DNA of 64,000 bases, taken from the NCBI RefSeq assembly GCF_964213995.1, contig NC_135825.1, positions 12,462,001 through 12,526,000 of the forward strand. Reading direction: 5' to 3'. How positions within the stretch are numbered: the first letter of the stretch is position 1; each line of letters starts with the position of its first letter. Of the stretch, positions 3,434-56,698 are shown in pieces. The DNA comes from Mustelus asterias (Eukaryota). The translations under genes and the position numbers were made by a program. The notes below the pieces were generated by a model, which did not search any database, was not told the origin of the DNA, and was given only the letters and a program-made list of their open reading frames with translations.

Positions 3434-4160
3434 TCTGAATTTTAGGCTTGACGTGGAAGTGTGATTAGCGGCCTGGAGGCGGGTGTGGTATCCACTGCAG
3501 TCCCTGTTCAACCCCCTGACCCCCATTCCATTCTGGCCGGCCAGTGGGAAACGTGTGGGGAATGTCTCACTATCACCTTGCACAGGTGGCAGCAGGGCAT
3601 GTGCCAGGTGCAATGGGGTTTCTGGGGGAGGGGGGATTTGAGATTGGACAGGGAGCTCGCTGAGGGCTGCCAAGATGTGGTCAGAAGCCTCAGGGACCTG
3701 TACAGAGTCTGTCCATGCCTGGAAGGATATTATCTATTGGAGCAGCAATGATGGCTTCAGGAGCTGCATCCCATGCCAGGCAGGAATACAATGCCCATGG
3801 GCACTCTGCTCCCCAATTTACCAATCAATGCCAACGTGTTCTTATCGAGCCTGTTCTCCATTGTGAGAAGCAGCCAGAGTACATGCACTGTGACTTTGTA
3901 ATGATGGTTGCAACTCACATTTACTCTTCCTCCCTCAGAAGTGCCACCTTCACAACACCAGAGAGACTACAGGGTCCCTCCCTTGATGCCCGGGAAGGAG
4001 CTGCTCACAGATGCATCTATGTCACATCCTCCCTCTGCACCAATCACCAGCGCAGTCACAGGCATGTCGCTGTGCATTCATGGATTAGATCAGCTGGTGT
4101 TGCACAGTGGTGAGGGCACATCACACTCACCTGATGAGCTGGCAGAGGCAGAGAGAGAGG

Positions 4161-7823: not shown

Positions 7824-7860
7824 ATGTGGATTTTGATTCTCCTCATTTGCTCTCTGCCCG
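7824..7860 (+). CDS. Gene A exon 1, signal peptide MWILILLICSLP(G|)
   Basis: ATG followed by a hydrophobic leader, then G|GTGAGT donor (phase 1). Identical coding copy at 41672. Confidence 0.85.
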
Positions 7861-13800: not shown

Positions 13801-16800
13801 TGCCACCGTGCCGCCCCATGTCTATTTCTGTGTGCAAAACCTTTTGATGAAGTCACACACCGGAGTGAAACCCCACAGTGTGAGGCAGAACCCCAATTTC
13901 CAGCTCCCCTCCACTCTCCCAGCTCCTACCTGTGGGTCAAGAAAATATCCCAAATGTTTCAAAAGTAAACCATTGACTGTGAAATACTTTGGGACACTCT
14001 GAGATTGTGAATAGTTTCTATTTAAATCACAAACTGCATGGAATTTAACTCATTGGAATGTCTGTGTTTGAATGAAGTAGTCATTTCCTGTTCAATTCCT
14101 GAAATGTTGTCTCCTCAGTTTCAGGTGCATTGTGGGCAGAAACGAAAGGACCAGGAATTGTGGGAAGATCGATCACAGTAAATTGTCACTATGATGCATG
14201 GTGGTACAAGTCACATGTTAAATATTGGTGTCACGGCACAACTCGCCAGTGTAATGTTGTAGCAAAGACAAATCGGCAAAATGGAAGAATTTCAATCACA
14301 GATGACAAGTCACGAGGAATATTTGTTGTCACTGTGAAGGATCTTCGCTCAGGAGATGCAGGATGGTACAGCTGTGGTATTGAAAAAGCTGGTCTCGATC
14401 CAATGTGTCCTGTCGAGCTTCAAGTATCTGACGGTACATTTCTCAGTCATTATCTTTATTCATCTCGACTGAAAAGTTTGATCCATGTTTTACTCGTGGG
14501 GAAACAGAGACAGCTCCGATATCCCGAGCAGTGCGGAGCCTGGCAGCTAGAGGGCAGTGGTCAGGGAAACTGACTTATGTTACATAAATCCAATGTCAGG
14601 AGCTCGGATTCAGAAAAAAGTAAAATTCAGACAATAACAACAGTTTCATGGTCATCAGTAGATTCTATATCCCAGTTACTTTTTATTGAATTTGAATTCT
14701 GCCATCTGCCATGGCAGGATTCAAACCCAGGTCCCCAGAACATTCACTGAGTTTCCAAACAGTCTAGCAATAATACCATTAGGCCATCTCCTCCCCTCCA
14801 AAGAATTTAACAAGATCCACAGGCTTCCTGATATAATGGGTGACTCAAGATACTGAGGTCAAACGAACAGAGTTCAACTTTACAAGTGAATTAACCTGGA
14901 GTTGTCATGTTGTTTGGATGGTAAAAGCAGCCTCTTTATTAACTGTTGAGACATTGGCCTCGATTTTCATTCCGGAGGCAGGTCCGGAGAATTTGGAAAA
15001 TTCCCAACTCAACCTGCCCGCCTCGGGAGAAACTGCCCACAAATGACGGGATCATCATTGCTGCGGGGGCAGGGGTGGGGGGTGTTGGTTGTGGACTGGA
15101 TACAGGCCAGCCGGCACAGGAAGATATGCACAGAGAGTCAAAGATTAAAGAAAGTTTATTTATCAGTCACAAGTAGGCTTACATTAACATTGCAATGAAG
15201 TTACTGTGAAAATCCCCTAGATGGCTACACTCCAGCACCTGTTCGGGTACACTGAGGGAGAATTTAGCATGGCCAATGCACGTAACCAGCATGTCTTTCA
15301 GACTATGGGAGGAAACCAGAGCACTCGGAGGAAATTCATGCAGACACAGGGAGAACGTGCAAATTCCAGACAAACATTGACCCAAGCCGGGAATCGAACC
15401 CAGGTCCCTGGCGCTGTGAGGCAGCAGTGCTAACCACTGTGCCACTCAGTGTGATGACAGGCTGTTTAAAATGTCCGCCTCATGTCGTGGGACTTTGTCC
15501 CAGGAAAAACCAAGGGCCCTCCATCCGTCATCCCTCATAGCCCACAAAAGATGTGGATGGACGGGAAGGGCTTGGCTGGAAGGGGTATTGGGGGCATAGG
15601 GGTTGGGTGGAAGGGCAGAGCAGAGCTCTGACTGGGTGTGGGTAAAGGGGCATTTGCTTCATGAGATCACATGGAGGGTGGCAGAGCGGACGAGGAGGAC
15701 CTTTTTTTTTAACTTCGCTTAACTTAAAACGACTTGGTAAAAATTCTGCTCGTTATCCCGAGCAAACCTCCAGATCAGAGTCAAAATCATCGCTATTTCC
15801 ACAGGGGTTTCTTGAGATTTGTTCATGGGTAATGTTTTGATTTTAGGAGCCTCTATTTTGATTTTTGGGTGTTCATTTTTCATTCTCATTTACTCCTTTA
15901 CTCAGTGATGGAATTGTCAGATTAGATTCTGTATTCACATTCATTTTTAGGGTTTCTTCCTTGCGCGTGTGTGTGTCGACATAATTGAAACTTTCAATTT
16001 TAACTCTAAAGAAAAGATAATACCTGTTCATTTATTGTAAATAAATTTCCCATACTCGATTTCCAAACTGAAGATTCAAGATACTCGCCAGAGGTAACTG
16101 ATTAGGAATGATTCTCAGATGTGCAGCTCCTGGGCAGCGGGAAGGAAGGAGGTGAAAGTCATCATAAATCCTCATAAAATCCCTACAGTACAGAAGGAGG
16201 CCATTCAGCCCATCGAGTCTGTACCGACCACAATCCCACCTCCTATCCCCTTAACCCATACATTTACCCTGCGAATCCCCCTGACACTCAGGTCAATTTA
16301 GCATGGCCAGTTAACCTAACCTGCGCATCTTTGGACCGTGGGAGGAAAACGTAGCACCCGGAGGAAACCCACGCAGATGCGGGGAGAATGTGCAAATTCC
16401 ACACAGACAGTGGCCCAAGGCCAGAATCGAACCTGGGTCCCTGGCACTGTGGGGCAGCAGTGCTAACCTGTGCAGGTGTTGTAACTCCTGCTCCTGAATG
16501 GGAAGGTGTTTCCTCCACATTGCTAAAATTAAACTCATTGTAGAAATATCTGTCTGCTGTGCGGTTTGACAGTGCGACAGACTGACTGACTGACATTCTA
16601 TTTTCACTGTCCAAGATCAGTTTATGTTTCTGCCGTCAGAGTATCTATCTGTGCTGCATCTCGCTTCGGAAAGCTGGTTTAAAAATGTAACATTTGACAG
16701 TGTTTTTACCAAACCCCCTGATCGTTGCAAAAACAGAAAAATGCTGCAAAATCTCAGCAGGTCTGACAGCATGTGGAGAGAGAATAGCGCCAACATTTCG

Positions 16801-19800
16801 AGTCTAGATGACCCTTGGTCAGAGCTGGCGAAGGGTCATCTAGACTCGAAATGTTGGCTTTACTCTTGCTCCACAGGTGCGCTCAGTCCTGCAGAGGTTT
16901 TCCAGCATTTTTCTGTTCTTGTTTCAGATTCCAGCATCCGCAATATTTTGCATTTATCTCCTGATTAGCCCAGCACCAAAGAAACACACTTGCTAATATT
17001 CTGTGTCAAATGAAATACTTTCAGATTAAAAAATGGGTCTGTTGCAATCAGCAAAGTGGATGGAACCCATTCCGCTCTGTCGAAATTAAGTTAACTGGAA
17101 GCTGACGGTCTCTGGTTTTGGGTTTTACTAAGTTTATTGGAAAACTGCCCATTTCAGAAGGTGCTTCGAGATTTGGTAAATAGGTGCAGATTTTTTATTG
17201 TACAGCAAGGTGAAGAAGTAAAAACTCACACAATTCTGATCATCATTGCCTTACATTCAAAACTCATTGGCTGCCTCATGACACCAGCGGTAATCAGCTC
17301 AGACCAGGGGCTCTATATATTGTTCGAGAGCATTAAGCAGCAAAGAACAATAGTTATTAAGAATAACTATAGTTAACAATGTAAACCTGGACAAACGTAT
17401 CTCAAAATCTCATTCAACATATGTGATCAGGACATGAGTTTGCAACACCTGTTTCCTGTGCTGCACACCAACCTTTTTCCAACCCACAACCTAAAATATC
17501 TAGTTCCTCATCAGAATGGAGAGAGCTCCAGACACATAGGGTGTGATCTTACCACCTGTTCACGCCACGCTCCCACTGCAGCGGGAAGGGAAAATCTTAC
17601 TGGCATGAGCAGTCGGAAACTTCCGGCCGTAGTTCCGTTCCAGGACGACACAACTCACGTCTCACATAATGGATTGTAACAGGTTTGGAAATTTAAAAGG
17701 CTGAATGTGCCAATTCAGTGTAAGAGCTTTAACTGTTTACATGCTGATTGCGAAGAACTCAGTCAGACAGATTTCACTCAGTTTCCACAGGAAACACTTT
17801 CCGTTCGGTTGAAATTAAGTTCACTGGAAATTGATGGTCTTTGGTTTTGAGTTTTAATAATTTTATTGGAAAACTGCCCATTTCAGCAGGTGCTTCGAGA
17901 TTTGCGAAATAGGCACAAATCTTTTATTATACAGGAAGCTGCAGCAATAAAAACTCACACAATTCTGATCATCACTGACTTACATTCAAAAGTAAATGCG
18001 TGGACACTCGACACGAGGAAGAAATTTCCCAATGGGGCCTCATAAGGGTCTTGTTGCCATGCCAACTGGGGTTTTCAGTTGGCAATGCAGACAGGCCACA
18101 TTGCCCGGTCTGGATCAGGGTCAGGCAGCTGTGGGATTTTCAAGGATAAAGTAAACTCACCCGGGCTTGCCCCTCGCTGTCTCCATTCTCAGATCAGCAA
18201 CTCCCACCTCAGCCAGGTGAGACCCTCCAGCACCAGGACCCCACCCACTCTCCCTGATTGGATGGTGAGCTCAGTCCCTGGCCTTTAATTGGCTGGAGCA
18301 GTGGAGATAGCAATGGGCATGCCTAAAGTGTGACGTGCGGTGTCTGGACCCAGACTGTCTCCCGTGTCCCGTTCCCAAACCCTGATTACATTTTTTTAAT
18401 TCATTCATGGGACTTGAGCATCGCTGGCCAGGCCAGCATTTATTGCCCATCCCTAGTTGCCCTTGAGAAGGTGATGGTGAGCTGCCTTCTTGAATCGCTG
18501 CAGTCCACATGCTGTGGGTTGATCCATAATGCCATTAGGGAGGTAATTCCAGGATTTTGACCCAGCGACTGCGAAGGAACGGCGATATATTTCCAAGTCA
18601 GGATGGTGAGTGGTTTGCAGATGGTGGTGTTCCCATGTATCTGATGCCCTTGTCCTTCTGGATGGAATCAGTCATGGATTTGGAAGGTGCTGCTAAGGAT
18701 CTTTGGTGAATTGCTGATCTTGTAGATGGTAAACAATGCTGCTACTGAGTGTCGGTGGTGGAGGGAGTGGATGTTTGTGCATTTGGTGTCAATCAAGCGG
18801 GCTGCTTTGTCCTGGATGGTGTCAATTGTGTTGGCATCCACCCCATGGAGGGGTAGATGTCAGATTCCAACATGGCTGACCATGCCTGAGATTCTGAAGG
18901 GCAGAAAGTGGGAGAGTGTTTGATTTTTAGATGTTCGGTCAGTATCTAAATGTTTGTTTCTTCCCCACAGAACCCGTGTCTGTTCCTGCACTTAAATTTC
19001 TATCACCATCAAATGCCTCATGTTCTGGGGGCTCAGTGTCCGTCTCCTGTGAGTCTGTCCAGGGATCACTTCCCATTCGGTACACATGGTATGAAAAGAC
19101 CCCGTCTGAAGATTCAAAGATCTCTGACGCCAATAAACTGGATCTACATTGTCAATCCTTCACACAGCAACATCATCAATATTACTGCACAGCCTCAAAT
19201 AACCAGGGAGAAAAATCCAGTGAAATGGTGAATGAGTCAGTGATCAACAGACCAGGGGAGAATTGCAGTTATGTGATACAAATAAACAGCATTGGTAAGT
19301 GTGACTGTAAATAAACCATTTGGTGATTGAATTTTTGAAGAAATGTTTATCTCATAAGTGTTTCCGGCCAGAACGGGATTTGCACCCACAGTGGACAGGC
19401 CCAAATAATCACCCGTCCCCCACCCCTACCCCCACCTCCACAATGTCTAACTCTGGTTTCTGGATGGTGAATGATGTCAGAGACAAAAGAACAAAGGGAG
19501 GAATTAGGAGCACCGTCTGAAGATTCAAAGATCTCTGACACCAATAAACTGGATCTACATTGTCAATCCTTCAAACAGCAACATCATCAATATTACTGCA
19601 CAGCCTCAAATAACCAGGGAGAAAAATCCAGTGAAATGGTTACAGTGTCAGTGATCCACAGATCAGGGGAGAATTGCAGTTATGAGATACAAAATGGACG
19701 CCGTGGTAAGTGTTATTTTATCCAATCAATATGGTTGATGTTTTTTTTATTCTTGCCTATTGATATATATTTGATTGGTTACATAATTGCATCAAGAGCT

Positions 19801-22800
19801 GATCACATGATTTGATGGTGATGTCACCAGGGTGTTGCAAAGGCTGCTGTTATAATTTCAGTTTGTATTCTGTGCGGGCAAGGCCTCCTGGAATAAACTT
19901 GTTGTGTGTTACTTTGAAACTATGGGGCTAAACTTATGAAAAATATTCTAAATCCAGGATGTGTGTGAAAATGGGAGAGTTTCTGATCCATTTTTTGGGA
20001 GAGTCTTGCACACTGCACACAGTGAAAAACCCCCCAGCAAAAACCGTTTCTCGCCTGTAGGTTGAGGGGCCGGGGTTTAAATTGCCAGAACATTGGCTAA
20101 GAGCAGCAGAGGGCGCCATTGTGCATGTGCAGGTCCCTCTGCTCTGAGAGCAGAGAGGTCAGTCAGTCTGCTGTTCTCAGCCAGAGAACACCCCTGCGCA
20201 CATGAACCAATCAACCATGTGATCTCCCTCCCTGCCTGGACTGAATCCCCCTCCTTCCCTCCACTGATCGCAAGGCAGAGTGGCAGCAGACTCCTCCTCT
20301 CTCCCCCTCCCCGATTGTCCTGCCCCTCCCTATCCATGATCACTATGCAGAGTGAGCAGCGGTTCCCTCCCCCCGTCACCATTGATTGGCCACCCCTGGT
20401 CTGGCCCTGCCCCCATAATTAGCCAGGCCCCCTCAGGTTCCACACCCTTGGAACTGCCCTGTGCCCATTGGCCAGTGCCAATGTGCCCAGTGGGCAGTGC
20501 CAGGGTGCCAGGCTCGTCTCCATGGTAAAAAGGGAGTCATTTTAGCAAGTATATGTATAGTTGCTAACTGTATTTCAAGTGGCCATTAAGTCTGTAAGAT
20601 GAATGTTGTTTATTTGGAACTGAAACAGTGATAAGTTGTAAATTAATGTTGTTTCCTTTTCACTTTTAAATATTGTTCAACTGTTGATAATTAAGTTGCG
20701 TGGGAAGTCATTAAAGTAAAAGAAAATACAGAGTAGTCTCAATTTGCTGTGCCTGCAAGAGAAATGGCAAATCTATTAGGATCTCTGGAGTCTTTCAATT
20801 CAGAACATTTATCAGCGAGTTCCGACAGCATTCCCTTCCAGCCATGTGCTGCAGGTCAGGCACACGGGGCAGGGACAGACTCCTGATTATCACAAGATGG
20901 GTTCCTATTCACTGCAGAGTACAGGCAGTGTGAGTGCCTGTGTTAACATGAGCGCCCCTGCTCGGAGCACCAGCTGCCTTAATTGATGAGCCCTCAAGCA
21001 GCACATGGTGCCCTCCCCACCATGCCCAACTAAATCCCAACACTCAGAGCAGTCCCTCACCACACCCCACAGCCACGACAATGGAACATCCGTGTGTCTG
21101 GAAACAGCAGCCCCCCCATCCAGCACTTAGTAAAGTCCACCACCCCACCCCACTCCACTCCAAAGAGGTAACAATGGCACATCCCTGTGCCTGGAAACAG
21201 CATCTCCCGCACTTAATGAACTTCCCCACCCCACCCAGAAAGTTTCCAGCCCCTGCCTCCAACCCTCCCCTGCACTCCAGGGGGACTGCAGTTCCATCAC
21301 ACTTACCTCCTTGCTCCTCAGTCCGAAAATGTGCCAAAACGGTGCACTGGCTGTGCTAAATTCTCCCTCAGTGTACCCGAACAGGCGCTGGAGTGTGGCG
21401 ACCAGGGGATTTTCACAGTAACTTCATTGCAGTGTGAATGTAAGCCGACTTGTGACTAATAAATAAACTTTAACTTTACTTCAGCACCAGGTCCCGACTT
21501 TTATAGAGCAGTTGTAAACCCAGCCAGCGTGATGTCACGCCGGAGAGGGGGGAGACGCTAGCGGGGGTGGAGAATTTAATGACGGACTCACTGATTATAT
21601 GCAAAGTTATGGTAATGCATGTAAATTGCTGCCACGCTGATTTTCAGCACGAATCTGTTTGCGTTGAAAAACGTCATCTAGGAGACACGCAGAGGCCCGG
21701 CTGCCCAGCGAGAAGCCTGCGGCAGAGCCTCTGCTAATGTCTCCCGGCCTGCTGTGCTACACGAGCAACAGGATGGGAGAATCACCGCCGCCCCTCCCCC
21801 TTTGATGTTTAAGTCCCTGTGGTAAACCACTGTTAGCTTATTACCTGTATATGTGACATGCCTGGACACATCCCTGCCGGCCCTACCCGAGACTCCTCCC
21901 CCCCCGGTCCAGGTATAAAGGCGACTGCTCCCCACCCCCCTGCCTCAGTCTGGACCAGTTCATCGGCATGGGTGTGCTCCAAGTCTTTTGCTAATAAAAG
22001 CCTATTTGTTCTTGCATACAAACTAGTCTTTGCTCGATTGATGGTGCATCAGTCCCCAAAAGAACGGTGTGGATTTCTACTGTTTTCACGATTTCAAATT
22101 TCTTTGGTCAGATCACCCCCATATAATGTGATAAATTTCTATATGAAGGATCACTTTCAGGCGGAATTTAACTCATTAGAATGTCTGTGTTTGAATGAAG
22201 CAGTTATTCCCTGTTCAATTCCTGAAATGTTGTCTCCTCAGATGCATTGTGGGCAGAAAGGGAAGTGAGAGGAATTGTGGGAAGATCGATCACAATCGAT
22301 TGTCACTATGGTGCAGAGTACCGGTCAAACGTGAAATATTGGTGTCGCGGCTGGACTCGCCAGTGTGATGTTGTAGCAACAACAAATCGGCAAAATGGCA
22401 GAATATCAATCACAGAAAACAAGACACAAGGAGTATTTGTTGTCACTATGAAGGATCTTCGCTCAGGAGATGCAGGATGGTACAGCTGTGGAATTGAAGA
22501 ACTTGGTCTCAATCCAATGTATCACGTAAAACTACAAATCTCTAACGGTACATTTCTCAGTGATTGTCTTTATTACTCTCGACTGAAATGTCAGATCAAT
22601 GGCTCGAATTATACACATAAAGATGGGGGGGTGGGGCTCTAGTAGCGCAGCGGGCCGGGAGCCAACAGCGGAGGCCATTTTGCGGGCTTCCTGCTGGGTG
22701 CCACGGCCTCCGCACATCTCCAAGACTATGCTTTTTGACATAATCAGCTCCGCGCCAGAAATCTCCATTTCCATGTGATTAGCGGGCCTGGGAATAAATT

Positions 22801-37475: not shown

Positions 37476-37830
37476 GGGGGAGGCGATGGCCTATGGCTGG
37501 AGTAATAATCCAGAAACTCAGTTGATGTCCTGGGGACCCGGGTTCAAATCCCGCCACGGCAGATGGTGGTATTTGAATTCAATTAAAAAATCTTGAATTG
37601 AGAATCTACTGATGACCATGAAACCATTGTTGATTGTCGGAAAAACCCATCTGGTTCACTAATATCCTTTAGGGAGGGAAATCTGCCATCCTTACCTGGT
37701 CTGGCCTAAAAGTGACTCCAGAGACACAGCAATGTGGTTGACTCTCAACTGCCCTCCAAGGGCAACTAGGGATGGGCAATCAATGCTGGCCAAGCAGCGA
37801 CACCTATGTCCCATCAATGAATAAAAAGAA
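37476..37830 (+). mobile_element. Second tRNA-derived SINE family, full length, within a minus-strand CR1 remnant (about 37380-38700)
   Basis: B box GGTTCAAATCC. Tail matches the LINE end at 18393-18465. Flank encodes LVRPQLEFCVQFWSP. Confidence 0.8.
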
Positions 37831-40711: not shown

Positions 40712-41156
40712 TTTAGAAGAGTGAGAGGGGATCTCATAGAAACTTATAAAATTCTAACATTGTTACACAGGGTTGATTCAGAAAGAATGTTCCTGAGGGT
40801 GAGGGAGTCCAGAACTAGGAGTCAGAGTTTGAGGATAAGGATGAACCTTTTAGAACTGAAGTGAGGGGAAATATCTTCATCCAGAGGGTGGTGAATGTGA
40901 GGAATTCACGACCACAGAAAATAGTTGAGGCCAAAACCTTGTCTGATTCCAACAAGGAATTAGATATAGCTCTTGGGACTGAAGGGATCAAAGGATATGA
41001 TGGGAAGGGTGGATCAGGACATTGAATTCGATGGCCAGCCATGATCAAAATGAATGGCGGAGCAGGCTCAATGGGCCGAATGGCCTACTTGATTCTAGTT
41101 TCTGTGCTTTGCTTCTAGAATAGTTGCTTCTCGTTTTTGTGTTTCTATGTCTCGAT
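40712..41156 (+). mobile_element. CR1 3' fragment with caaggag TSD
   Basis: TSD at 40705-40711 and 41157-41163. Single copy of the site in unit A (6186-6192). Confidence 0.85.
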
Positions 41157-41671
41157 CAAGGAGCTCAAATCTCCTCATCCTGACAGAATTGTTACTCGTA
41201 CAAATAACAAGATTCACATTAAGCAAATCAAAACAAAATATTAATAAATCTCCATGTTCCATTAGTGAAATAACTCACATTAAGAAAAAAATACTTGTTT
41301 CACTGAGGAGTTGATGGAATGTTAATAACAATGGAGGAGGGCATGTTCTAACTCCCCTCACTATTAATTAGAAAACTTCACTTGGGTCAGTATTATCCTC
41401 AGGCTCTGACTTTTTAACATTTTGTTTCCAAAATTTTACATTCTTTCAACAATAATTCATTTCATTCTTTTGCTAAATATAACTGACAGAACTTCAGGTT
41501 CTGAGGAGCCGGATTTTGTGAAGTGGCTGACTGCAGTTTCATGACTCGACTTCCTGCTGTCTTCTTGCTCATTTAAATTTCTGATACAATTTATATTAAG
41601 CATCTATTTCAGCGTGAGACACAGGAGCTGGGTGACTGACGACAAACACTGATCTGATCTCCAACACAACG

Positions 41672-41708
41672 ATGTGGATTTTGATTCTCCTCATTTGCTC
41701 TCTGCCCG
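41672..41708 (+). CDS. Gene B exon 1, signal peptide
   Basis: MWILILLICSLP G|GTGAGT, identical to gene A. Confidence 0.85.
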
Positions 41709-44700: not shown

Positions 44701-47700
44701 TGGAGCGAGAGAGTGAATGGTCAGGTACAACCTGCACAATCCTCAGACTTCAGCAGAGTGCAGCTGAACCAGAACAAAACAGACCTAGCTCCTCCCATTA
44801 ACCACATCATCACATGATCCAGCCTTCCTGAAAACACATTACATTCCTTTAACCAACCCCTCACCTCCCCCCCCCCCCCGCCCCCCACCAAGGGAATCTC
44901 CTTTTCATAAAAGAAAGTCCATTTGCTCTATCCTAATAAGCACTATATGGTGAAAATGACTAATTATCCTGCTCTCCCAACAACTGATCTGCATTCTAAA
45001 AAAACATCCCAACTGCCTGTGAATTAAAGCTGAATTTTAAACATTCCCTTGCAATATTAATAAACTATATATATATCATCAAGTACATTATCATCACACC
45101 TCCCCTTTTAAACAATGAACCGACAGTACAAAAAGATGGCTTCCTGTTTCTAAAGCCTCTAGTTTTTCACAAAAATTAACCGTTCAGCGGAACATCTTAT
45201 TACATCTCAGCATGTAAATTTGGGGCGGCACATTGGTTGGCACTGCTGCCTCACAGCACCAGGGACATGGATTTAACTCTCACCCTGGTTGACTGCCTGT
45301 GTGGAGTGGACATCTTTTCCTCGTATCTTTGTGGGTTTCCTCTGGGACCTCCTGTTTCCGCCCACAGTCCAAAGATTTGCGGGTTAGGTGGATTAGCCAT
45401 AATAAATTGCCCCTTCATGCCAGGGGGATTAGTCGGGTAAATTACATCGAAGGAACGGCGTTTTATTTTCAAGTCATGCTGTGTCACTTTTTAATGCAGT
45501 CCAGCCAACTCACCTGCTCTATTTAATCTCTCCCGAAAATTTGACAAACTGAGATTGACAGATTTTGTTTGGAAGCAATATTCAGTGTCAGAGAAATAAG
45601 CTGGGTAAATGGAGATAAGGTGCAGGTCAGTTGTGACATAGTTGAATTGTGGACTAGTTTCAAGGGGCCGAATGGTCTAATTGCTGCTCCATGTTCCGTA
45701 CCCAAGTGTCCTGATGAGTGCAAGACAAAAAACTTTGATATGTGTCTTCTTTTTTCAGCAATACTCAAGTTTAGTGCCTCCAAATGACTATTTACCAAAG
45801 GGGTTTATCAGGTTCTTCTTCCTGCACCAACTGGGATTTCTGGTCGGCAGCGCAGACAGGAAACGTTGCGTCTCCAGCATTAAGGTCAGGCAGCTGTGGG
45901 GTTAAAACAAAAGAAACTTAGCTGGATTTTCCCCTCGCTGGCGACAAACCCAGATCCCACCTCAGCCAGGTGAGACCCTCCAGCATCAGGACCTCATCCA
46001 CTCTCCCTGATTGGATGATAAGTCAGGTTCCTGGCCCTTAATTGACAGGAGCATTGAAGACTGCAATAGGCATTCCCATCGTACAACATGTGGTATCTGG
46101 ACCCCAGACTATCTCCCATGTCCAGTTCCCAAACTTTGATTAAACATCCACCCCATGGAGACGTAGATGTCAGAATCCAACATGGCCGCCACTGGCTGAG
46201 ATACTGAAGGGAAAAAAAAGGGAGAGTATTTGATTTTATTGGACGTTCAGTCAGTATCTGAATGGTTGTTTCTATCCCACAGAACCAGTGTCTGTTCCTG
46301 AACTTAGATTCTTATCACCACCAAATGCCTCATGTTCTGGGGGCTCAGTGTCCGTCTCCTGTGAGTCTGTCCAGGGATCACTTCCCATTCAGTACACATG
46401 GTATGAAAAGACCCCGTCTGAAGATTCAAAGATCTCTGACACCAATAAACTGGATCTACATTGTCAATCCTTCAAACAACAACATCATCAATATTACTGC
46501 ACAGCCTCAAATAACCAGGGAGAAAAATCCAGTGAAATGGTAACACTGTCAGGTGTCAATAGAACAGAAAACCACTGCAGATATGTGGTACAAAATGGAA
46601 GCCATGGTAAGTGTTATTTTGTACAAGCAATGTGAGCCAACACAGTAATTCTCTGTTAAAGGAACAGCTTGCTGATAACACCCATTTGCCGATCTTGTTG
46701 AGTCATAGAATCCCTTCAGTGTAGAAGGAGGCCATCTGGCCAATCGGGGTCTGGACTGACTCTCCAAAAGAGCATCATACCCAGGCCCTGTATCATTGCA
46801 ACATCTTTCTCTCATTTTGAAATCAATTCCTTATTAAAACACACCGATGCCAATTATCTGAGTTCTCACTGGAGGTGGGAAACTCTCCTGTCTCCAACCT
46901 GGATCATCGTTATAAACGAGTTTGTAAATCCACTGCCGGTGGGTAAGGTTTCCTGTCACTAATGTAAGGTCAGAAAGGTAGTCCCTTGATATAGGAACCG
47001 GCCATTGCCAATATTAGCAGGTGATAGTTTGAGGTGCTCACATGATATTCAACAATTTAATTTCTCATTGTTCCACAGGACCAGGCTGAGGAGAAGGCAG
47101 TTGGTTTGTTCACTATATTTATTTATTTATTTTAAGTTAAATTTGTGTAAAAAATCGGAGGTCATTTTTAAAACAGGAAGTGGGCCCAGCAGGAGTCTGG
47201 GAAGGTTTTTGGAGGGTTTAAAAGTGCTTAACTTGCAGTTTTCAGCCTCATTGTTCCACAGGACCAGGCTGAGGAGAAGGCAGTTGGTTTGTTCACTACA
47301 TTTATTTATTTATTTTAAGTTAAATTTGTGTAAAAAATCGGAGGTTTTTTTTAAAACAGGAAGTGGGCCCAGCAGGAGTCTGGGAAGGTTTTTGGAGGGT
47401 TTAAAAGTAGGCCGCACGTTTGAGCGGGCAGCGTCGTTAGTGGGCAGCAGAGTGAGCAGGAGGCAGAGTGAAAGCTGTAGGGCTTTGGCTCACAGGGCTT
47501 AGGCAGAAAGGGCGAGCAGGGGTGAGTTAATTCATTTTTTGCTGTTTCTACCTGGTACTGGCAAGGTATCTAGAGGGGATGGGTGTGAAGGCAGTGCAAT
47601 GTTCCTCTTGCACTATGTTCGAGGTGAGGGACGACGTCAGTGTCCCTGCTGATTATACCTGTGAGAAGTGCATCCATCTGCAGCTCCTCCAAAACCGTGT

Positions 47701-50700: not shown

Positions 50701-53700
50701 AAATGTGAGGTGATTCATTTTGGTAGGACTAATTTAAATGTGGATTACAGGGTCAAAGGTAGGGTTCTGAAGACTGTGGAGGAACAGAGAGATCTTGGGG
50801 TCCATATCCACAGATCTCTAAAGGTTGCCACTCAAGTGGATAGAGCTGTGAAGAAGGCATATAGTGTGTTAGCTTTTATTAACAGGGGGTTGGAGTTTAA
50901 GAGCCGTGGGGTTATGCTGCAACTGTACAGGACCTTGGTGAGACCACATTTGGAATATTGCGTGCAGTTCTGGTCACCTCACTATAAGAAGGATGTGGAA
51001 GCGTTGGAAAGAGTGCAGAGGAGATTTACCAGGATGCTGCCTGGTTTGGAGTGTCGGTCTTATGAGGAAAGGTTGAGGGAGCTGGGGCTGTTCTCTCTGG
51101 AGCGGAGGAGATTGAGGGGAGACTTAATAGAGGTTTATAAAATGATGAAGGGGATAGATCGAGTGAACGTTCAAAGACTATTTCCTCGGGTGGATGGAGC
51201 TATTACGAGGGGGCATAACTATAGGGTTCATGGTGGGAGATATAGGAAGGATATCAGAGGTAGGTTCTTCACGCAGAGAGTGGTTGGGGTGTGGAATGGA
51301 CTGCCTGCAGTGATAGTGGAGTCAGACGCTTTAGGAACATTTAAGCGGTTATTGGATAGGCACATGGAGCACACCAGGATGGTAGGGAGTGGGATAGCTT
51401 GATCTTGGTTTCAGATGAAGGTCGGCACAACATCGTGGGCCGAAGGGCCTGTTCTGTGCTGTACTGTTCTATGTTCTATGTTCTATGTTAATTAACAGAA
51501 AAATTATTTTCACAGATACAATATTAACCACTTGTCCAATTTTAATGGCTGCACTAATTCCTCGCCTCATCTTTCCCTGTGAGTTCAATGCAGAGCTGAA
51601 AATCCTTCCCATCAAGGACATCTCTCCAGGAAAGCATCATGGGTGCTGGGATCCAGTGGTGGCAGAGGCCAGCTTCCTGGTGGGAACGTGCTTTTATGAC
51701 TCAGCAAAATAAACAAGAGGATATCTGGACTGAAATCCTCGCTGCACGAGTCTTTAAATGCTTTAATAACAACTCTTTATCCCCAGTGCCCGGAATGGGT
51801 TACAAAACACAGATTATCAATAAAATTTAGGACACTTCCACATCCCCCCTCACTATCAGACAAGAGAACATTAGAGGGAAAAGAATTCTCCCAAATCCGT
51901 TATCCCCACCATGTCCTGAGGTTCCATTTGGGAAGAGGGCTCTCTCGGTTGACTTAATCAGATGATTCTGAATTTTATCCTCATGTCTCGATAGGAGCCG
52001 CAAATAATTGTGAAATTGTAACAACAAAATCACCCACAACTTCAGCCACGTCTTCAGGATCTACACCTGTCAGTGAAAGGTACAGTGTTCTCAATGCTGA
52101 TGTTTCCATTAGCATTGCTTTCCAATCAGAATCAATGATTATCAGTTTTGGCATGAGGCTTTCCAATAATTTACCAGAATGGAAATGTTGGCTGTGTTTA
52201 CATAATGCTATTGTGTTTGCTTCCTAACAAAGTTGCTGTTTCTGTCAGTGGAAATTCTTGACCCCGTTTAGTGGAAAGAGATGAGTATTTTAGTTTGCCA
52301 ACTTTCACATGGTGCAGTTTTCATTATTCATGTTAATCACTTCACCGTGAACCCAATCTCATGGAGTTGTGTTTGTCACACTCCAGCCATACCAGATTTC
52401 CTTAACCCGGTGTGTTCTGGAGTACCGCTGACAGGAACATTGCATTCACTGTCATCTTCTCCTTCTCAGTTGCCCAGTTTAATACATTGTTCCCAAACTG
52501 AGAGGGTTAAAGGCTGTCTGCTTCCAGCTGGTTCCGAAGTTCCTCTTAGGAGTTGCATCAGGGAATTGTGGGATGATGAAAACAGAAAGCGCGGGAAAAA
52601 CTCAACAGGTCCAGCAGCATCTGTGGAGAGAGGAACAGAGTAAACAGTTCGAGTCAAATGCTTTTTCTTCATTCGTTCATGGGATGTGGGCGTCTCTGGC
52701 TATATGCCCATTCCTAATGATCCTTGTTCAGAGAGCATTTAAGAGTCAATGACATTGCTGTGGGCCTGGAGTCACATGTAGGCCCGACCAGGTAGAGAAG
52801 GAAGATTTCCTTCCCTAAAGGACATGAGTGAAGAAGATGGGTTTTTACAACTATCGGTCATGGTCCCGTGGTCAGCGTTAGACTTCTAATTCCAGACTTC
52901 CATTGAATTTAAATTTCACCATCTGCCATGGTGGGATTCGAGCACAAGTCCCCCAAGCATTACACTGAGTCTCTGGATTACTAGTCCAGTGATATTAGCA
53001 CTCCGACACCATCTCCCCATGTGGAATGATGTCATTCTAAATTCCTCACTCACTGAAGGGATCCATCACCATTGCTATATTGCACCAGACAGTGGTGCTA
53101 TTCCACAAATGGCCAATCACTTTAGAGTATTTTCACTTTTAAGATTTCGCTGAGTGTTACAGTTGTATGTTTTGGACATTTTAATGAAACTTACTCAAGT
53201 TGTTCTTTATCTAATGATCATGAAGTGACTAAATTAAACTTTAGTTTATATTTTGCAGAAAAAGTCCTAAGGGACATAACATTGCTACAATATACAATGA
53301 TCACAGTGTAAAGAGGAGATTAATGTTTCAAACACGAAGCTGCCTCATTCCCTTCAAATCATTCTGTATTTCTTCCACTTTGCTCAGTTCCTTCATCTGG
53401 AATGTGATTCGCTGGGGGCTCTTCGCCCTCCTGGTGATTTGTGTTATTTCGGTCACATGGTTCACGAGAAAATCTCGGGTGAGGATTATGGACTTTACAA
53501 CCATCATTCTGAGCACTTTGTACATTCCCCATCAATTATCTCAAAAACATTGATCACAGATATTGTGAAAAGAAACTTGCATTGATGTTAATGTCCGCAG
53601 GATTAGACAAAGCCTTTACAGATTATATAGTTCGGTTTGAAGTGTTGCTGATGTTATGTCGGAAAGATCAAGGGGATTCTTTGTTGTGGATGGTGTCAAC

Positions 53701-56698
53701 ATTCCTGATCCTTGTTGCAGCTGCATCCATCCTGAAGTGATCAGCTGTCTTTGTCCAGGATAACTTCCACTCATAAATGAAAGTTAAACTTCATCACTGA
53801 AGGATTTGATAGTTAAATGCACACAGTCCATTTCATGAATTCAAGGAATCCCAAGTTCTCATTTTCACTCTTCTGCTCATCATTATCACAATGAACTGAC
53901 TGGGTGTGACTAATCCCTACCTGTAAATTCAGCATCTGACCTCACACATATAGTGAGCTGTTTAAAAAGGAATTTTCAAAAAGCAACAAAAGATTCCAAA
54001 GTGTTTTTCTCTCCGGATGCATTTGAAGCGACTGTGCTCCTATTGAGACAACAGAAAGACTGCCAGCCAGCAGAAAGACCAACTTGCATCTGTCTCTCAA
54101 CCACCCGCTACTCCACACCCCCATCCCCAACCCTCCGGAGAGTGGTAAAGGCCCCGGGCGAGATTATCCAGCCCTTCCCATCCACTGGATCCTCCAGTCA
54201 CACGAAAGGACACTCACCATGGCGGGTTGGCTGGTGGCGGGATGGATGAGCCACGTGAAGCAGCGGAGAGACCTGCCCCTGCTGCTGGTAAACACACAAT
54301 GACAGTGAGAGGGAGGTGGATTGAGGGGGGGAGGGGGGAGGAGGGGGGGAGGGCTGAAGTTCCGGCCTCCTCCCCCATCCCTGATTGACTTCTTCGTTAC
54401 TGCTTTCCAAAGGCCATCACAAAATGCAAAGTAGGGGAAATGGAGCAATGACTGCCACAGACACACCCACTTTAAAATACACAATGGGTGAAGTATTTCA
54501 AGGTGAGGCTGCAGCCACTGCAGATAAAGATTGCAAATGCAACAGCTTTGGAAAACTGTGTTTCAGTCGGTTCAAGCAGTCAACATTACCGGAAAACCTA
54601 CCAGCATTTATAATTACAACATCTCCTACATCTGACCGCCTTCAAGAAACCGGCATTTTAAAAAATCTTTTCTTTANNNNNNNNNNNNNNNNNNNNNNNN
54701 NNNNNNNNNNNNNNNNNNNNNNNNNNNNNNNNNNNNNNNNNNNNNNNNNNNNNNNNNNNNNNNNNNNNNNNNNNNNNNNNNNNNNNNNNNNNNNNNNNNN
54801 NNNNNNNNNNNNNNNNNNNNNNNNNNNNNNNNNNNNNNNNNNNNNNNNNNNNNNNNNNNNNNNNNNNNNNNNNNNNNNNNNNNNNNNNNNNNNNNNNNNN
54901 NNNNNNNNNNNNNNNNNNNNNNNNNNNNNNNNNNNNNNNNNNNNGGGCCTCAGCAAATGAACACTGCCTCTGGGCCAAATGCTTGTCACCGCATTTTCAT
55001 TATTTTACTCTTGTGTTTGGAACGGCAACATGTCTTCTATTGCTTTAATTCAAGGAAACCATTTTGATTGGTTCCTTATCGCTCACAGCTTAAATATTAA
55101 AAACATTCTGATTTGGAAAAGATGCAACCTCGCAAAAAGGAAAATTCAAACCAATTGTTGTGACCATCTGAGGAGGTGGAATACAGGGTAGCCTGTTCGT
55201 CCCATCTCACCGAGACATAACGTCATTGAGACAAAAGTTACAGACAATTTGCACACAGCAAATTCTTCATATCAGCAAAGGAGATGATTGTCCAGATAAG
55301 CTGTTTAAGCCAAGACACTGGGCGAAATCATCAGCTCTCCTTCAAATAGAATCATGGCAGTTTTCGGGGCCTCAGCAAAAAGATGTGTCTCTCAGGGAAT
55401 CATTCATCTCACAATGAGTGACAGGGAAAAGGAGTTAGAGTTACAGATAAATTTAATCTTATCTAATTGAATGGTGAGTTGAATGAGGAGTTGAATATTC
55501 CTGTTGCTGGGTTGCTCTGCAATCCATCAATTGTTCCTGTGTAACCCATCCATGTAGAACCCTCCCATCTTACAATGCAAGCTAGAAAACAGTTCCTCCC
55601 AGAACATGGAGGGATAAAATGGGAAAGGCTAAAAAAAAGGCAGCAGAAATGTTTGTTTTTGGACAAGAACAGCAGGGACATAATATGGTGGCATGGTGGC
55701 ACATTGGTTAGCACTGCTGTCTCACAGCACCAAGGACCTGGTTTCAATTCCAGCCTTGGGTCACTGCCTGTATGGAGTTTGCACATTCTCCCTGCTTTTG
55801 AGTAGGTTTCCTCTGGGTGATCCAGTTTCCTTCCACGGTCTAAGGATGAGCGTGTTAGGTTGATTGGCCATGCCAAATTGCACCTTGATATCAGGGGGAT
55901 TAGTAGGGTAAATATGTGTTGTTACAGGGATAGGGCCTGGGTGGGATTGTTATCGGTGCAGGCTTGGTGGTCCAAATGGCCTCCTTCTGCACTGCAGTGA
56001 TTCAATTATGCAGACTGTAGCAAGAGGCGGAGACATTGGCTCAATGGTATTTTCTGGAAACAGCAATTGGACTGCATGAAATATATATAACATAGAAAAA
56101 AAAAGTTTTTTTATCAGTCGTAACTAAGGCTTACATTAACAATGCAATGAAGTCACTGCAAAATTCCCCTCGTTGCCACAATCCGGTGCCTGTTTGGATC
56201 AATGCACCTAACCAGCACGTCTTTCAGAATGTGAGAGGAAACCGGAGCACCCGGAGGAAACCCACGCAGACATGGGGGGAACGTGCAAACTCCACACAGA
56301 CAGTGACCCAAGCCAGGAATCGAGCCCGGGTCTCTGGCGCTGTGAAGCAGCTATGCTAACCACTGTGCTACCGTGTTACCCCAATGACAATCTATTTCTG
56401 CAAACAACTGCCCATAACCCCAACTGCAAGAAACAATTAGTTACTAGTGAAAAAATAATGTTCCTTGTCTCAAAAGGGCCACAACAGACACCTTTTCCCA
56501 GCAGTTACGCAATGCGACCTCAACACAGTTGCAACTCATCACAAGCTTTGTCACAATTTATTGCAATTTCCAGAATTCTGTTCAAATCTGAAATGACAAT
56601 TGATGCATTGTTCTCACTCGCTCAATCAATCTGATGATTTTCTTTTCCAGTCACTCAATGATTCCGATTCTCACTGTTCAAACAAAGTGGGAAAATGA
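41672..56698 (+). CDS. Gene B: paralogous receptor SP-V-C2-stalk-TM(Arg)-tail. join(41672-41708,43692-44006,46283-46606,51995-52079,53388-53478,56651-56698), 299 aa
   Basis: 900 nt open frame if the TM exon uses the AG at 53386-53387. The ancestral acceptor is AC at 53377-53378. The last exon lies beyond an N gap. Confidence 0.7.
42720..43335 (-). mobile_element. Penelope-like retroelement RT fragment
   Basis: FYLLTKTHKQDCPGRP and LFTLDVQPLYTS resemble the PLE motifs Y.LPK.HK...P.RP and .DV.SLYT. Confidence 0.75.
43692..44006 (+). CDS. Gene B exon 2, V-type Ig domain
   Basis: 315 nt, 7 substitutions versus A-V1 by manual comparison. Intact splice sites. Confidence 0.92.
44311..45110 (-). 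mobile_element. Probable 3' LTR of an LTR retrotransposon with polypurine tract
   Basis: TG..CA ends (44311, 45098). Minus-strand PPT taaaaggggagg abuts TGTGAT. Confidence 0.5.
45221..45441 (+). mobile_element. Diverged V-SINE
   Basis: tRNA head plus V core. Confidence 0.75.
46283..46606 (+). CDS. Gene B exon 3, C2 Ig domain
   Basis: tatcccacag acceptor, 324 nt, CAT G|GTAAGT donor. Confidence 0.9.
47064..47407 (+). repeat. Tandem duplication (period about 183 bp) in the CR1 5' UTR
   Basis: ctcattgttccacaggaccaggctgagg...ggagggtttaaaagt occurs at 47064 and 47247. Confidence 0.9.
47579..48505 (+). CDS. CR1 ORF1 (Cys zinc finger, leucine zipper, SGNH esterase)
   Basis: CSSC..CEKC, LELELEEL, GDSLVR, HIGTND, DGVHL motifs. 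Confidence 0.9.
   Translation: MGVKAVQCSSCTMFEVRDDVSVPADYTCEKCIHLQLLQNRVRELELELEELRIIRDAEMAIDRSFRDTVTPRNENRWVTVRGAGKKQSVQVSPVVVPLSNKYSALDTVEGDDIPVVSRSERISGTESVPVAQEGKEESGRAIVIGDSLVRGIDRRFCGSKRDSRMVCCLPDARVRDVSDRVFRILKGEGKQSQVVVHIGTNDIGKRRDGDLKQEFRELGWKLRAKTKHVVISGTLPVPRDSELRNRERVHLNMWLQGWCRREGFRYVDNWNTFWGRWDLYKQDGVHLNQRGTNILGGKFATALQGDLN
48506..51402 (+). pseudogene. CR1 ORF2 (AP endonuclease plus reverse transcriptase) broken by one in-frame TGA at 49471-49473
   Basis: YFNARSI, ITETW, GDFNFP, SDHN in the endonuclease. DFSKAFD, GVPQGSVLGP, FADDTK in the RT. The two track ORFs are contiguous in the same frame. Exact start uncertain. Confidence 0.9.
51995..52079 (+). CDS. Gene B exon 4, stalk (GAANNCEIVTTKSPTTSATSSGSTPVSE)
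   Basis: 85 nt, same boundaries as the gene A stalk. Confidence 0.8.
52662..53018 (-). mobile_element. Second-family SINE, diverged
   Basis: ggagtcacatgtaggcc...gatttccttccctaaaggacat core. Confidence 0.75.
53388..53478 (+). CDS. Gene B exon 5, TM exon (SSFIWNVIRWGLFALLVICVISVTWFTRKSR)
   Basis: Paralog of 30288-30387. Upstream acceptor mutated, next AG 9 nt downstream is in frame. CGG|GTGAGG donor. Confidence 0.7.
54677..54944. other. Assembly gap (268 N) in the last intron of gene B
   Basis: Run of n. Confidence 1.
55688..56381. mobile_element. Two V-SINEs tail to tail (55688-56008 +, 56101-56381 -)
   Basis: Heads, V cores and the two different tail types. Confidence 0.8.
56651..56698 (+). 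CDS. Gene B exon 6, tail SLNDSDSHCSNKVGK*
   Basis: tttcttttccag acceptor. Homologous to 32419-32466. Confidence 0.65.
   Translation, partial: SLNDSDSHCSNKVGK

What the first reader, a model, noticed from the sequence alone, without database searches (positions are those of the whole stretch)
7824..56698. Tandem family of mosaic activating immune receptors: CD300/pIgR-type V, FCRL-like C2 and an FcRgamma-type Arg transmembrane helix
Seen: two spliceable genes with V domains carrying the extra KYWC..C cysteine pair, C2 domains with GSLPI.Y.W and YYC.ASN, a Ser/Thr stalk, a TM beginning WNVIRWGLF, and a ~20 aa tail without ITIM or ITAM. Known: the extra C-C' disulfide marks the CD300/TREM/pIgR/FCAMR family. 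An Arg near the N-terminus of the TM in an N-x-I-R-x-G/A context is how FcalphaRI, LILRA, OSCAR, GPVI and NKp46 pair with FcRgamma, whereas activating TREM/CD300 members typically use a central Lys with DAP12. Modular CD300-like receptors (MDIRs) are described from skate. Inference: this is an elasmobranch activating receptor cluster combining modules that belong to separate families in mammals, possibly an Ig-Fc or lipid/pathogen sensor. Whether this exact architecture is already described cannot be established from the sequence.
Basis: partly seen in the sequence, partly recalled or inferred. Interest (0 to 1): 0.85.

Follow-up and report, generated by a model that had tools for sequence, protein, structure and literature searches.

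The report
Shark MDIR-type activating immune receptor genes
Two intact neighbouring shark genes encode cell-surface immune receptors of a family first described in a skate in 2006, so they are real and well formed but belong to a known kind.

Summary
The window carries two tandem, intact, spliceable genes on the + strand. Each has a leader, V exons, C2 exons, a Ser/Thr stalk, a transmembrane (TM) exon reading WNVIRWGLF and a 21-aa tail without tyrosine motifs. Among solved structures the V exons are closest to CD300f/CLM-1 and pIgR. The C2 exons are closest to FCRL5.

The architecture is not new. Skate "Modular domain immune-type receptor 5" (501 aa) has the same V-C2-V-C2-stalk-Arg-TM-short-tail layout. 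It matches the window exons at 49-68% identity. RefSeq models of this kind exist in many sharks, rays and a chimaera. The V tree puts the window's V domains in one supported clade with MDIR2 and MDIR5.

The TM Arg is kept in 47 of 47 family TM alignments. The "N" of NxxR is kept in only 2 of 46. An activating role through an acidic adaptor is therefore likely, but pairing with FcRgamma specifically is only inferred.

The assembly gap lies in an intron of gene 2. No RNA run was available.

Verdict: new members of a known family. First-stage notes of this scan flagged similar receptors elsewhere in the same genome.

The parts
7824..7860 (+). Gene 1 leader exon (MWILILLICSLP, phase 1 out)
   Evidence: ATG and GT donor. 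The leader is 100% identical to that of gene 2. Homologues start MWILILLICSLPVSGALW.
14119..14433 (+). Gene 1 V exon 1, CD300/pIgR-type V domain with the extra Cys pair (KYWCHGTTRQC) and a fifth Cys
   Evidence: Pfam V-set E 3.4e-9. PDB CLM-1 E 1.4e-18 and pIgR. Borders. Cys columns.
18971..19294 (+). Gene 1 C2 exon a (GSLPIRYTW, YYCTASN)
   Evidence: Pfam Ig_3/Ig_C17orf99. 88% identical to Mustelus asterias C2. Borders.
19508..19705 (+). Half C2 exon relic (second half only), open and phase-compatible but with a weak acceptor; not in the models
   Evidence: 19513-19713 is 92.6% like 19102-19302. tblastn covers residues 43-103 only. DNA and borders.
22242..22547 (+). Gene 1 V exon 2
   Evidence: Pfam V-set E 1.3e-10. 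72% aa identity to V1, dS 0.26. Borders.
26472..26795 (+). Gene 1 C2 exon b
   Evidence: PDB FCRL5 E 6.7e-39 over 6 domains. Borders.
28087..28171 (+). Gene 1 stalk exon (AEYACEVLTTKSPTTSATASGSTPVSE), phase 1 in, phase 2 out
   Evidence: tblastn of S. canicula P0127 residues 229-260 matches here.
30297..30387 (+). Gene 1 TM exon (SFIWNVIRWGLFTLLVICVISVTWYTRKSQ); an alternative acceptor lies 9 nt upstream
   Evidence: Arg kept in 47 of 47 family alignments.
32419..32466 (+). Gene 1 tail exon (SLNESDSHSSNKVGN, stop); AATAAA at 32564
   Evidence: Homologue tails are PLNDCSSHSFSNVGK (P0127) and LLNESDHHRSANVAR (P0154).
41672..41708 (+). Gene 2 leader exon
43692..44006 (+). Gene 2 V exon
   Evidence: Pfam V-set E 2.2e-8. 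97.8% nt identity to V1; 7 differences, all non-synonymous.
46283..46606 (+). Gene 2 C2 exon
   Evidence: Pfam Ig_3 E 5.1e-7. Borders.
51995..52079 (+). Gene 2 stalk exon (AANNCEIVTTKSPTTSATSSGSTPVSE)
53388..53478 (+). Gene 2 TM exon (SFIWNVIRWGLFALLVICVISVTWFTRKSR); the upstream AG seen in gene 1 is AC here
54677..54944 (.). Assembly gap, inside the intron between the TM and tail exons of gene 2
56651..56698 (+). Gene 2 tail exon (SLNDSDSHCSNKVGK, stop); ATTAAA at 56811

Best explanation
The window holds two intact tandem paralogues of the cartilaginous-fish MDIR family (modular domain immune-type receptors). Genome annotations call these genes 'polymeric immunoglobulin receptor-like', 'CMRF35-like molecule' or 'Fc receptor-like'. 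Gene 1 is V-C2-V-C2 and gene 2 is V-C2. Both end in a Ser/Thr stalk, a TM helix with an Arg in its outer third and a 21-aa tail without signalling motifs. They are the activating-type half of a paired activating/inhibitory family.

Shown: the gene structures, the domain kinships, family membership, and conservation of the Arg.

Inferred: the V domain binds a still unknown ligand through its variable loops. The buried Arg pairs with an acidic residue of a dimeric ITAM adaptor (FcRgamma, CD3zeta or DAP12 class). That adaptor is needed for surface expression and signals through Syk-type kinases. ITIM-bearing relatives with the same ectodomain counterbalance the signal.
For: Family membership:
- phmmer of the V1 exon against 1.84 billion representatives gave 2408 hits at E<=1e-3 and 100 at E<=1e-30. 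All 20 of the listed proteins whose source I looked up come from cartilaginous or bony fishes; the ten closest looked up are all elasmobranch, with V and C2 domains.
- A search with the S. canicula homologue P0127 returned two proteins named Modular domain immune-type receptor. MDIR5 has E 5e-139 and MDIR2 has E 1e-71. They stand among 76 hits that are otherwise RefSeq or GenBank models from sharks and rays.
- A second search added Callorhinchus.
- tblastn of MDIR5 on the window gave V 49-56% and C2 58-68% identity. MDIR2 gave V 55-58% and C2 57%.
- In the V tree all three window V domains lie in a clade (97/91) with MDIR2, MDIR5, shark and chimaera V domains. That clade is separate from multi-V pIgR-like proteins of rays and bony fish.

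Same layout in homologues:
- MDIR5, Heptranchias P0154 and S. canicula P0127 all show the layout, including the tail motif.

Activating type:
- Arg is kept in 47 of 47 TM alignments across the family.
- 32 Arg-TM motifs were found in 31 of 215 stored proteins. Tails are 3-26 aa in 25 of them; the other 7 run longer, most of them in fused or read-through models.
- Relatives with the same ectodomain carry an uncharged TM and ITIM tails. Examples are P0081, P0174, P0187, MDIR2 and Callorhinchus P0231.

Intactness:
- Open exons with canonical splice sites.
- dN/dS of 0.45-0.66 for six of seven exon pairs.
- Most exons are more conserved than their flanks.

Precedent:
- Passages of PMC2413239 report that Xenopus FcR-like receptors with an N-terminal TM Arg (NxxR) need or use FcRgamma for surface expression.
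Against: - There is no RNA evidence for either gene. No RNA run was listed and read laying showed only DNA contigs.
- The window's own proteins were not found in the protein collection. The splice models therefore rest on sequence signals and on homologues in other species.
- The N of NxxR is not conserved (2 of 46), so homology of this TM with the LRC-type FcRgamma-docking TM is unproven.
- Passages of PMC4016189 (2014) and PMC13337447 (2026) state that no FcRgamma homologue was found in cartilaginous fish.
- As I recall the abstract of the 2006 MDIR paper, it lists MDIR5 among forms lacking characteristic signalling motifs. I could not read it, because it is not held.
- The ligand is unknown.
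- No inhibitory partner gene lies in this window.
Confidence: 0.75

Rival explanations
1. The receptors are activating and pair specifically with FcRgamma through an LRC-type NxxR transmembrane segment.
For: - Both window genes read N-V-I-R-W-G, with the Arg at about position 7 of a 23-residue helix.
- Passages of PMC2413239 and PMC4536121 say that NxxR TMs occur in LILRA2, PIR-A, NKp46, GPVI, OSCAR and FcalphaR. They also occur in Xenopus FCRL-like, LRC and CD2/SLAM receptors and promote FcRgamma association.
Against: - The N is present in only 2 of 46 family TMs. The commonest residues there are K (16), S (10) and D (7).
- What is conserved is W-x-x-x-R-W, which is not the LRC consensus.
- No LILR or KIR chain is among the 60 best of 79 PDB matches to the C2 exon.
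- Two papers report that no FcRgamma was found in cartilaginous fish. That search dates from 2014, and I could not repeat it.
Confidence: 0.3
2. The Arg pairs with another adaptor, such as a CD3zeta-like, DAP12-like or DAP10-like chain or a lineage-specific one. FcRgamma is not involved.
For: - The Arg is invariant while its context differs from LRC receptors.
- FcRgamma is reported missing in sharks.
- Unchecked first-stage notes report ITAM-adaptor-like genes elsewhere in this genome.
Against: - From general knowledge, not tested here, DAP12 partners usually carry a central Lys. An outer-third Arg fits the FcRgamma/CD3zeta class better.
- No adaptor sequence was examined here.
Confidence: 0.3
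3. The genes are silent or decaying copies in a fast-turnover cluster, and the tidy structure reflects recent duplication only.
For: - There is no expression evidence.
- The window's proteins are absent from the protein collection.
- The two genes are young duplicates; V exons are 97.8% identical.
- A half-exon relic and a near-intact LINE lie in introns.
Against: - All 14 exons are open with canonical splice sites.
- dN/dS is below 1 for six of seven pairs.
- The leader, V, C2, TM and tail exons are clearly more alike than the flanking introns.
- The older V1/V2 and C2a/C2b pairs (dS 0.13-0.26) are still intact.
Confidence: 0.1

Closest known systems
Skate MDIR5 (Modular domain immune-type receptor 5, Rostroraja eglanteria, 501 aa; P0160)
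   Same: It has the same order of parts as gene 1: leader, V, C2, V, C2, Cys-containing stalk, TM with W-x-V-x-R-W, and a 19-aa tail without Tyr motifs. Per-domain identity to the window is 49-68%. Its V domains fall in the same tree clade.
   Different: It comes from a different lineage (skate against shark). The TM reads KVGR instead of NVIR. The tail sequence is unrelated (KKRDESEPRHSAHELQ against SLNESDSHSSNKVGN). The window's V1 and V2 are closer to each other (72%) than to either MDIR5 V domain. The four-domain forms therefore probably arose by separate cassette duplications.
RefSeq shark models such as S. canicula XP_038676045.1 'polymeric immunoglobulin receptor-like' (P0127, 304 aa) and Heptranchias perlo P0154 (529 aa)
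   Same: P0127 has the layout of gene 2 and P0154 that of gene 1. The TMs read WDVIRWGLF and WSVLRWVLF. The tails PLNDCSSHSFSNVGK and LLNESDHHRSANVAR are homologous to the window's tail exon.
   Different: V identity is 53-64% and C2 identity 62-74%. These are predicted models without a described function.
Mammalian CD300 (CMRF35/CLM) family and pIgR
   Same: The V domain has the extra Cys pair. CLM-1/CD300f is the best single-domain solved match (70.6 bits, E 1.4e-18). pIgR domains score 25-43 bits each.
   Different: CD300 members have one V domain and no C2. pIgR has tandem V-type domains and a long sorting tail. From general knowledge, activating CD300 and TREM members use a central Lys or Glu. 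Here V alternates with C2 and the charge is an outer-third Arg.
FCRL5 and other FCRL proteins
   Same: The C2 exon matches six FCRL5 domains, sharing GSLPI.Y and YYCTA.N (best domain 30.8 bits). FCRL4 gives E 8e-5.
   Different: FCRLs have no V domain and carry ITIM or ITAM-like tails. The similarity is about 30-35% and no orthology was shown.
NxxR-TM receptors that use FcRgamma (LILRA2, PIR-A, NKp46, GPVI, OSCAR, FcalphaRI; Xenopus XFL)
   Same: They share an Arg near the outer end of the TM, a short tail, and paired inhibitory relatives. In Xenopus this TM type is joined to FCRL-like ectodomains (passages of PMC2413239 and PMC4536121).
   Different: The ectodomains are unrelated to the LRC. 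The N is not conserved in the family. Association with FcRgamma is untested.

Membership tests
MDIR (modular domain immune-type receptors of cartilaginous fish) | Ig domains homologous to those of the named skate MDIR proteins | tested here: met
   MDIR5 on the window gives V 49-56% and C2 58-68%. MDIR2 gives V 55-58% and C2 57%. V domains share a 97/91 clade.
MDIR (modular domain immune-type receptors of cartilaginous fish) | Modular ectodomain with a variable number of Ig domains built from a few domain types | tested here: met
   Gene 1 has four domains and gene 2 has two. Relatives have one to eleven. The family definition itself is recalled, because the 2006 paper is not held.
MDIR (modular domain immune-type receptors of cartilaginous fish) | Multigene family with charged-TM forms and ITIM forms | tested here: met
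   Family-wide there are 31 Arg-TM proteins and several ITIM proteins. The window itself holds only two Arg-TM genes and no ITIM exon.
CD300/CMRF35 family | V domain with a second Cys pair | tested here: met
   KYWC..C aligns with the pIgR and CLM-1 Cys pair. The two Cys are present in 23 and 27 of 27 family V domains.
CD300/CMRF35 family | A single V domain followed directly by a stalk | tested here: not met
   Each V exon is followed by a C2 exon.
pIgR | Tandem V-type domains and a long cytoplasmic sorting tail | tested here: not met
   V alternates with C2 and the tail is 21 aa. Ray proteins with 4-5 tandem V domains form separate clades.
FCRL | Ectodomain of FCRL-type C2 domains only, with ITIM or ITAM-like tails | tested here: not met
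   C2 resembles FCRL5 domains. However, V domains are present and the tail has no Tyr motif.
LRC-type NxxR receptors coupled to FcRgamma | NxxR motif at the outer end of the TM | tested here: inconclusive
   Both window genes read NVIR. In the family, R is kept in 47 of 47 alignments but N in only 2 of 46.
LRC-type NxxR receptors coupled to FcRgamma | LRC-type C2 Ig domains | tested here: not met
   No LILR, KIR or related chain is among the 60 best of 79 PDB matches to the C2 exon.
LRC-type NxxR receptors coupled to FcRgamma | Physical association with FcRgamma | not testable with these tools
   This needs co-expression or co-precipitation. No adaptor sequence could be obtained here.

The most novel reading that the evidence does not exclude
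MDIR-type receptors join pIgR/CD300-type V domains to FCRL-type C2 domains. They could be the functional immunoglobulin (Fc or polymeric Ig) receptors of cartilaginous fish, which two papers describe as missing. The Arg-TM forms, such as these two genes, would trigger phagocyte activation through an FcRgamma/CD3zeta-class adaptor.
Probability: 0.1. Interest if true: 0.75.

Novelty: new member of a known kind. Interest (0 to 1): 0.28.

Why it matters
On its own this locus adds two well-formed activating-type members, in a shark, to a family known since 2006.

Its wider value is as a reminder. Printed statements that cartilaginous fish have nothing resembling pIgR or FcRL (passages of PMC4016189 and PMC13337447) do not fit the databases. 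Dozens of elasmobranch and chimaera proteins combine pIgR/CD300-type V and FCRL5-like C2 domains. Rays also have proteins with 4-5 tandem pIgR-type V domains.

The family has an invariant TM Arg. It is therefore a concrete candidate set for asking how sharks couple antibodies or other ligands to phagocyte activation.

Tried and rejected
- Tail exon alternative. I considered an acceptor at about 32341, reading NSVQIRNVN-stop, with a shorter NSVQI-stop in gene 2. I rejected it in favour of 32419-32466 and 56651-56698, because homologues end in the matching motif PLNDCSSHSFSNVGK or LLNESDHHRSANVAR.
- V exon acceptor. I first placed it at 14125. I corrected it to 14119, because homologues read LPVSGALW.
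- Inhibitory exons in the window. tblastn of seven ITIM tails gave nothing better than E 0.19, and that hit lies in a repeat.
- The window's own annotated proteins. None appeared in three homologue searches.
- Positive selection on V. V1 against the gene 2 V shows 7 non-synonymous and 0 synonymous changes. With about 1.5 synonymous changes expected, this is not significant.
- RNA evidence. No RNA run was listed. Read laying on 18900-24899 gave short DNA contigs from 4 runs of 3 samples. The listed joints have sides of at most 25 letters in low-complexity DNA, and none lies at an exon border.
- MDIR1, MDIR3 and MDIR4 were not retrieved.
- The 2006 MDIR paper and a 2010 review are not held.
- Paper searches for shark CD300, MDIR and FcRgamma found only PMC3031540, PMC4016189 and PMC13337447 to be relevant. 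One search was badly framed and gave nothing usable.
- Supplements are closed. Those of PMC4016189 may list which shark data were searched for FcRgamma.

Full report
**What is in the window**

The window is repeat-rich vertebrate DNA with a single N run at 54677-54944. Six-frame ORFs and tblastn of the exon peptides against the window find the following, all on the + strand:
- three V exons
- three full C2 exons and one half C2 exon
- two TM exons

A self-comparison shows that about 5.5-39.3 kb and 40.0-58.9 kb are colinear copies of one unit. Inside the first unit a V-C2 cassette is doubled.

With splice sites read from the DNA, gene 1 has eight exons:
- 7824-7860
- 14119-14433
- 18971-19294
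- 22242-22547
- 26472-26795
- 28087-28171
- 30297-30387
- 32419-32466

Gene 2 has six exons:
- 41672-41708
- 43692-44006
- 46283-46606
- 51995-52079
- 53388-53478
- 56651-56698

All borders are AG/GT. The Ig exons are phase 1-1, the stalk exon passes from phase 1 to phase 2, and the TM exon ends in phase 0. Adding exon lengths gives 509 aa for gene 1, or 512 aa with an acceptor 9 nt upstream of the TM exon. Gene 2 gives 299 aa.

Every search of window sequence was made exon by exon.

**The gap**

The N run lies in the 3172-nt intron between the TM and tail exons of gene 2. It begins 1.2 kb after the TM exon and ends 1.7 kb before the tail exon. No modelled frame crosses it, and no exon-like match lies beside it.

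The middle of this intron is not alignable between the two genes. The paralogue therefore cannot confirm continuity across the gap. The link of the tail exon to gene 2 rests on the scaffold and on the shared exon order.

**Domain kinships**

- V exons. They match Pfam V-set with E 2e-8 to 1e-10.
  - Among solved structures the best single-domain match is CLM-1/CD300f (70.6 bits, E 1.4e-18).
  - Next come other CD300 chains (E 1e-10), TREM2 (2e-8), pIgR D1 (8e-8) and NKp44 (5e-7).
  - Whole pIgR scores highest because five domains add up.
  - The KYWC..C pair aligns with the pIgR Cys pair.
- C2 exons. They match Ig_3, Ig_C17orf99 and Ig_2 near threshold.
  - They match six domains of FCRL5 with the shared GSLPI.Y and YYCTA.N motifs. 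The best domain scores 30.8 bits and the summed E is 6.7e-39.
  - FCRL4 follows at 8e-5.
  - No LILR or KIR chain is among the 60 best of 79 matches.

**What it is**

- phmmer of the V1 exon against 1.84 billion representatives gave 2408 hits at E<=1e-3. The closest are multi-Ig proteins that repeat the same V and C2 modules.
- Cluster look-ups and three homologue searches name them.
  - They are RefSeq or GenBank models from sharks: Scyliorhinus, Mustelus, Carcharodon, Cetorhinus, Heptranchias, Hemiscyllium, Chiloscyllium, Rhincodon, Heterodontus, Stegostoma and Pristiophorus.
  - They also come from rays and skates (Amblyraja, Leucoraja, Rhinoraja, Hemitrygon, Hypanus, Mobula, Pristis, Narcine) and from the chimaera Callorhinchus.
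  - The labels are inconsistent: pIgR-like, CMRF35-like molecule, Fc receptor-like, CXADR-like, A33-like or uncharacterised.
- Two hits carry the name Modular domain immune-type receptor (MDIR5 and MDIR2, Rostroraja eglanteria).
  - MDIR5 (501 aa) is V-C2-V-C2-stalk-TM(SYISWKVGRWLLF)-19-aa tail, which is the layout of gene 1.
  - MDIR2 is V-C2 with an uncharged TM and an ITIM tail.
- On the window, MDIR5 matches at 49-56% in V and 58-68% in C2.
- A maximum-likelihood tree of 47 V domains puts the three window domains in a 97/91 clade with MDIR2, MDIR5, shark and chimaera domains.
  - Within it they join a 95/86 group with Carcharodon, S. canicula and Hemiscyllium.
  - The clade is apart from the multi-V pIgR-like proteins of Narcine and Leucoraja and from bony-fish pIgR-like proteins.
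- The C2 tree is poorly resolved. It places the window's C2 domains next to Mustelus asterias domains at 87-88% identity. The genome is therefore probably a carcharhiniform shark near Mustelus. The species is not established.
- Shark homologues support the splice models.
  - P0127 (304 aa) and P0154 (529 aa) have the layouts of genes 2 and 1.
  - Their tails PLNDCSSHSFSNVGK and LLNESDHHRSANVAR match the tail exon chosen.
  - The spacing VSK-S-YIIWDVIRW matches the downstream TM acceptor.

**How it most likely works**

- The Arg is kept in 47 of 47 alignments of the window's TM exon to family members, and it is followed by Trp. The residue three places before it is N in only 2 of 46; K occurs 16 times, S 10 and D 7.
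- A motif scan found 32 such TMs in 31 of 215 stored proteins. Tails are 3-26 aa in 25 of them; the other 7 run longer, most of them in fused or read-through models.
- Relatives with the same ectodomain have an uncharged TM and two to four ITIM-like motifs.
- This is the pattern of a paired receptor family, so the Arg forms are most likely activating through an acidic ITAM adaptor. That step is inferred.
- Passages of PMC2413239 and PMC4536121 show that in Xenopus an outer-end TM Arg (NxxR) joined to FCRL-like ectodomains promotes association with FcRgamma. This is a working precedent.
- Against FcRgamma specifically stand the unconserved N and the printed report that no FcRgamma homologue was found in sharks (PMC4016189, repeated in PMC13337447; passages only). 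I could not test for adaptors because I had no query sequence.
- Within the family, V-domain variation is concentrated in the loop regions, while the two canonical Cys and one of the extra pair are invariant. This fits ligand binding by the V loops. The ligand is unknown.

**State of the genes**

- All exons are open.
- dN/dS is 0.45-0.66 for six of seven exon pairs. The seventh pair, V1 against the gene 2 V, has 7 non-synonymous and 0 synonymous changes, which is not significant.
- The leader, V, C2, TM and tail exons are more alike between the genes than their flanks. The stalk exon is not.
- No ITIM exon or uncharged TM exon lies in the window.
- Expression is untested. The run search listed four runs of one organism and one study, none of them RNA.
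- The single read-laying run, on 18900-24899, showed short DNA contigs from three samples. They cover unique parts of the stretch with 0-3 differences, for example a 593-letter contig across 19207-19512. No joint lies at an exon border.

**Comparison and novelty**

The mosaic of a CD300/pIgR-type V domain with an FcR-homologue-type C2 domain is the published hallmark of skate MDIRs. This rests on passages of PMC3031540 and on my recollection of the abstract of the 2006 Immunogenetics paper, which is not held.

These are therefore new members of a known kind.

One point may go beyond print. As I recall that abstract, MDIR5 is listed among forms without signalling motifs, yet its TM carries the family's invariant Arg. 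I could not check the paper.

My paper searches found no later work on shark MDIR or CD300-like receptors.

First-stage notes of this scan report further receptors of this type on both sides of the window, and an inhibitory one 128 kb beyond it. These are unchecked leads.

Noticed in passing
window 1-3514 and 60497-64000: Direct repeat, 99.2% identical over 3515 nt, cut at both window ends. It is built of old degenerate SINE and LINE pieces. It therefore looks like a recent segmental duplication with a period of 60,496 nt, or an assembly duplicate, rather than a young transposon.
   Followed up: no
window 47579-51402 (+), inside the C2-to-stalk intron of gene 2: Near-intact LINE with three ORFs. 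ORF1 (308 aa) has a GDSL-esterase-like domain, followed by an endonuclease ORF (362 aa) and a reverse transcriptase ORF (642 aa). Its 3' end recurs at 96.6% identity at 9736-10526 in the first intron of gene 1.
   Followed up: partly
window 19508-19705: Relic of the second half of a C2 exon, 92.6% like 19102-19302. It is still open, 198 nt long and phase 1-1 compatible, and it keeps its donor. Its acceptor AG lacks a pyrimidine tract. If spliced in, it would add half an Ig domain.
   Followed up: partly
window 14119-14433 and 43692-44006: V1 and the gene 2 V carry a fifth Cys (DPMCPVE or NPMCPVE). In 27 aligned family V domains only these two have Cys there; F occurs in 20. It may be a free or inter-chain Cys.
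   Followed up: partly
proteins P0008 (Narcine bancroftii) and P0012 (Leucoraja erinacea): Ray proteins with 5 and 4 tandem pIgR-type V domains form their own clades. This does not fit the printed statement that cartilaginous fish have no pIgR-like genes.
   Followed up: partly
window 22242: Contigs of three of four DNA runs read G instead of A at the first base of the V2 exon. This could be an allele or a paralogue mapping at the 95% threshold.
   Followed up: no
window 28087-28171 and the ends of the C2 exons: A Cys near the end of every C2 exon (NCSY, DCSY, HCRY) and a Cys in the stalk exon (EYAC, NNC) recur in homologues as ..CSY..(E/V)Y(T/S)C... They may form a membrane-proximal disulfide loop.
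   Followed up: no
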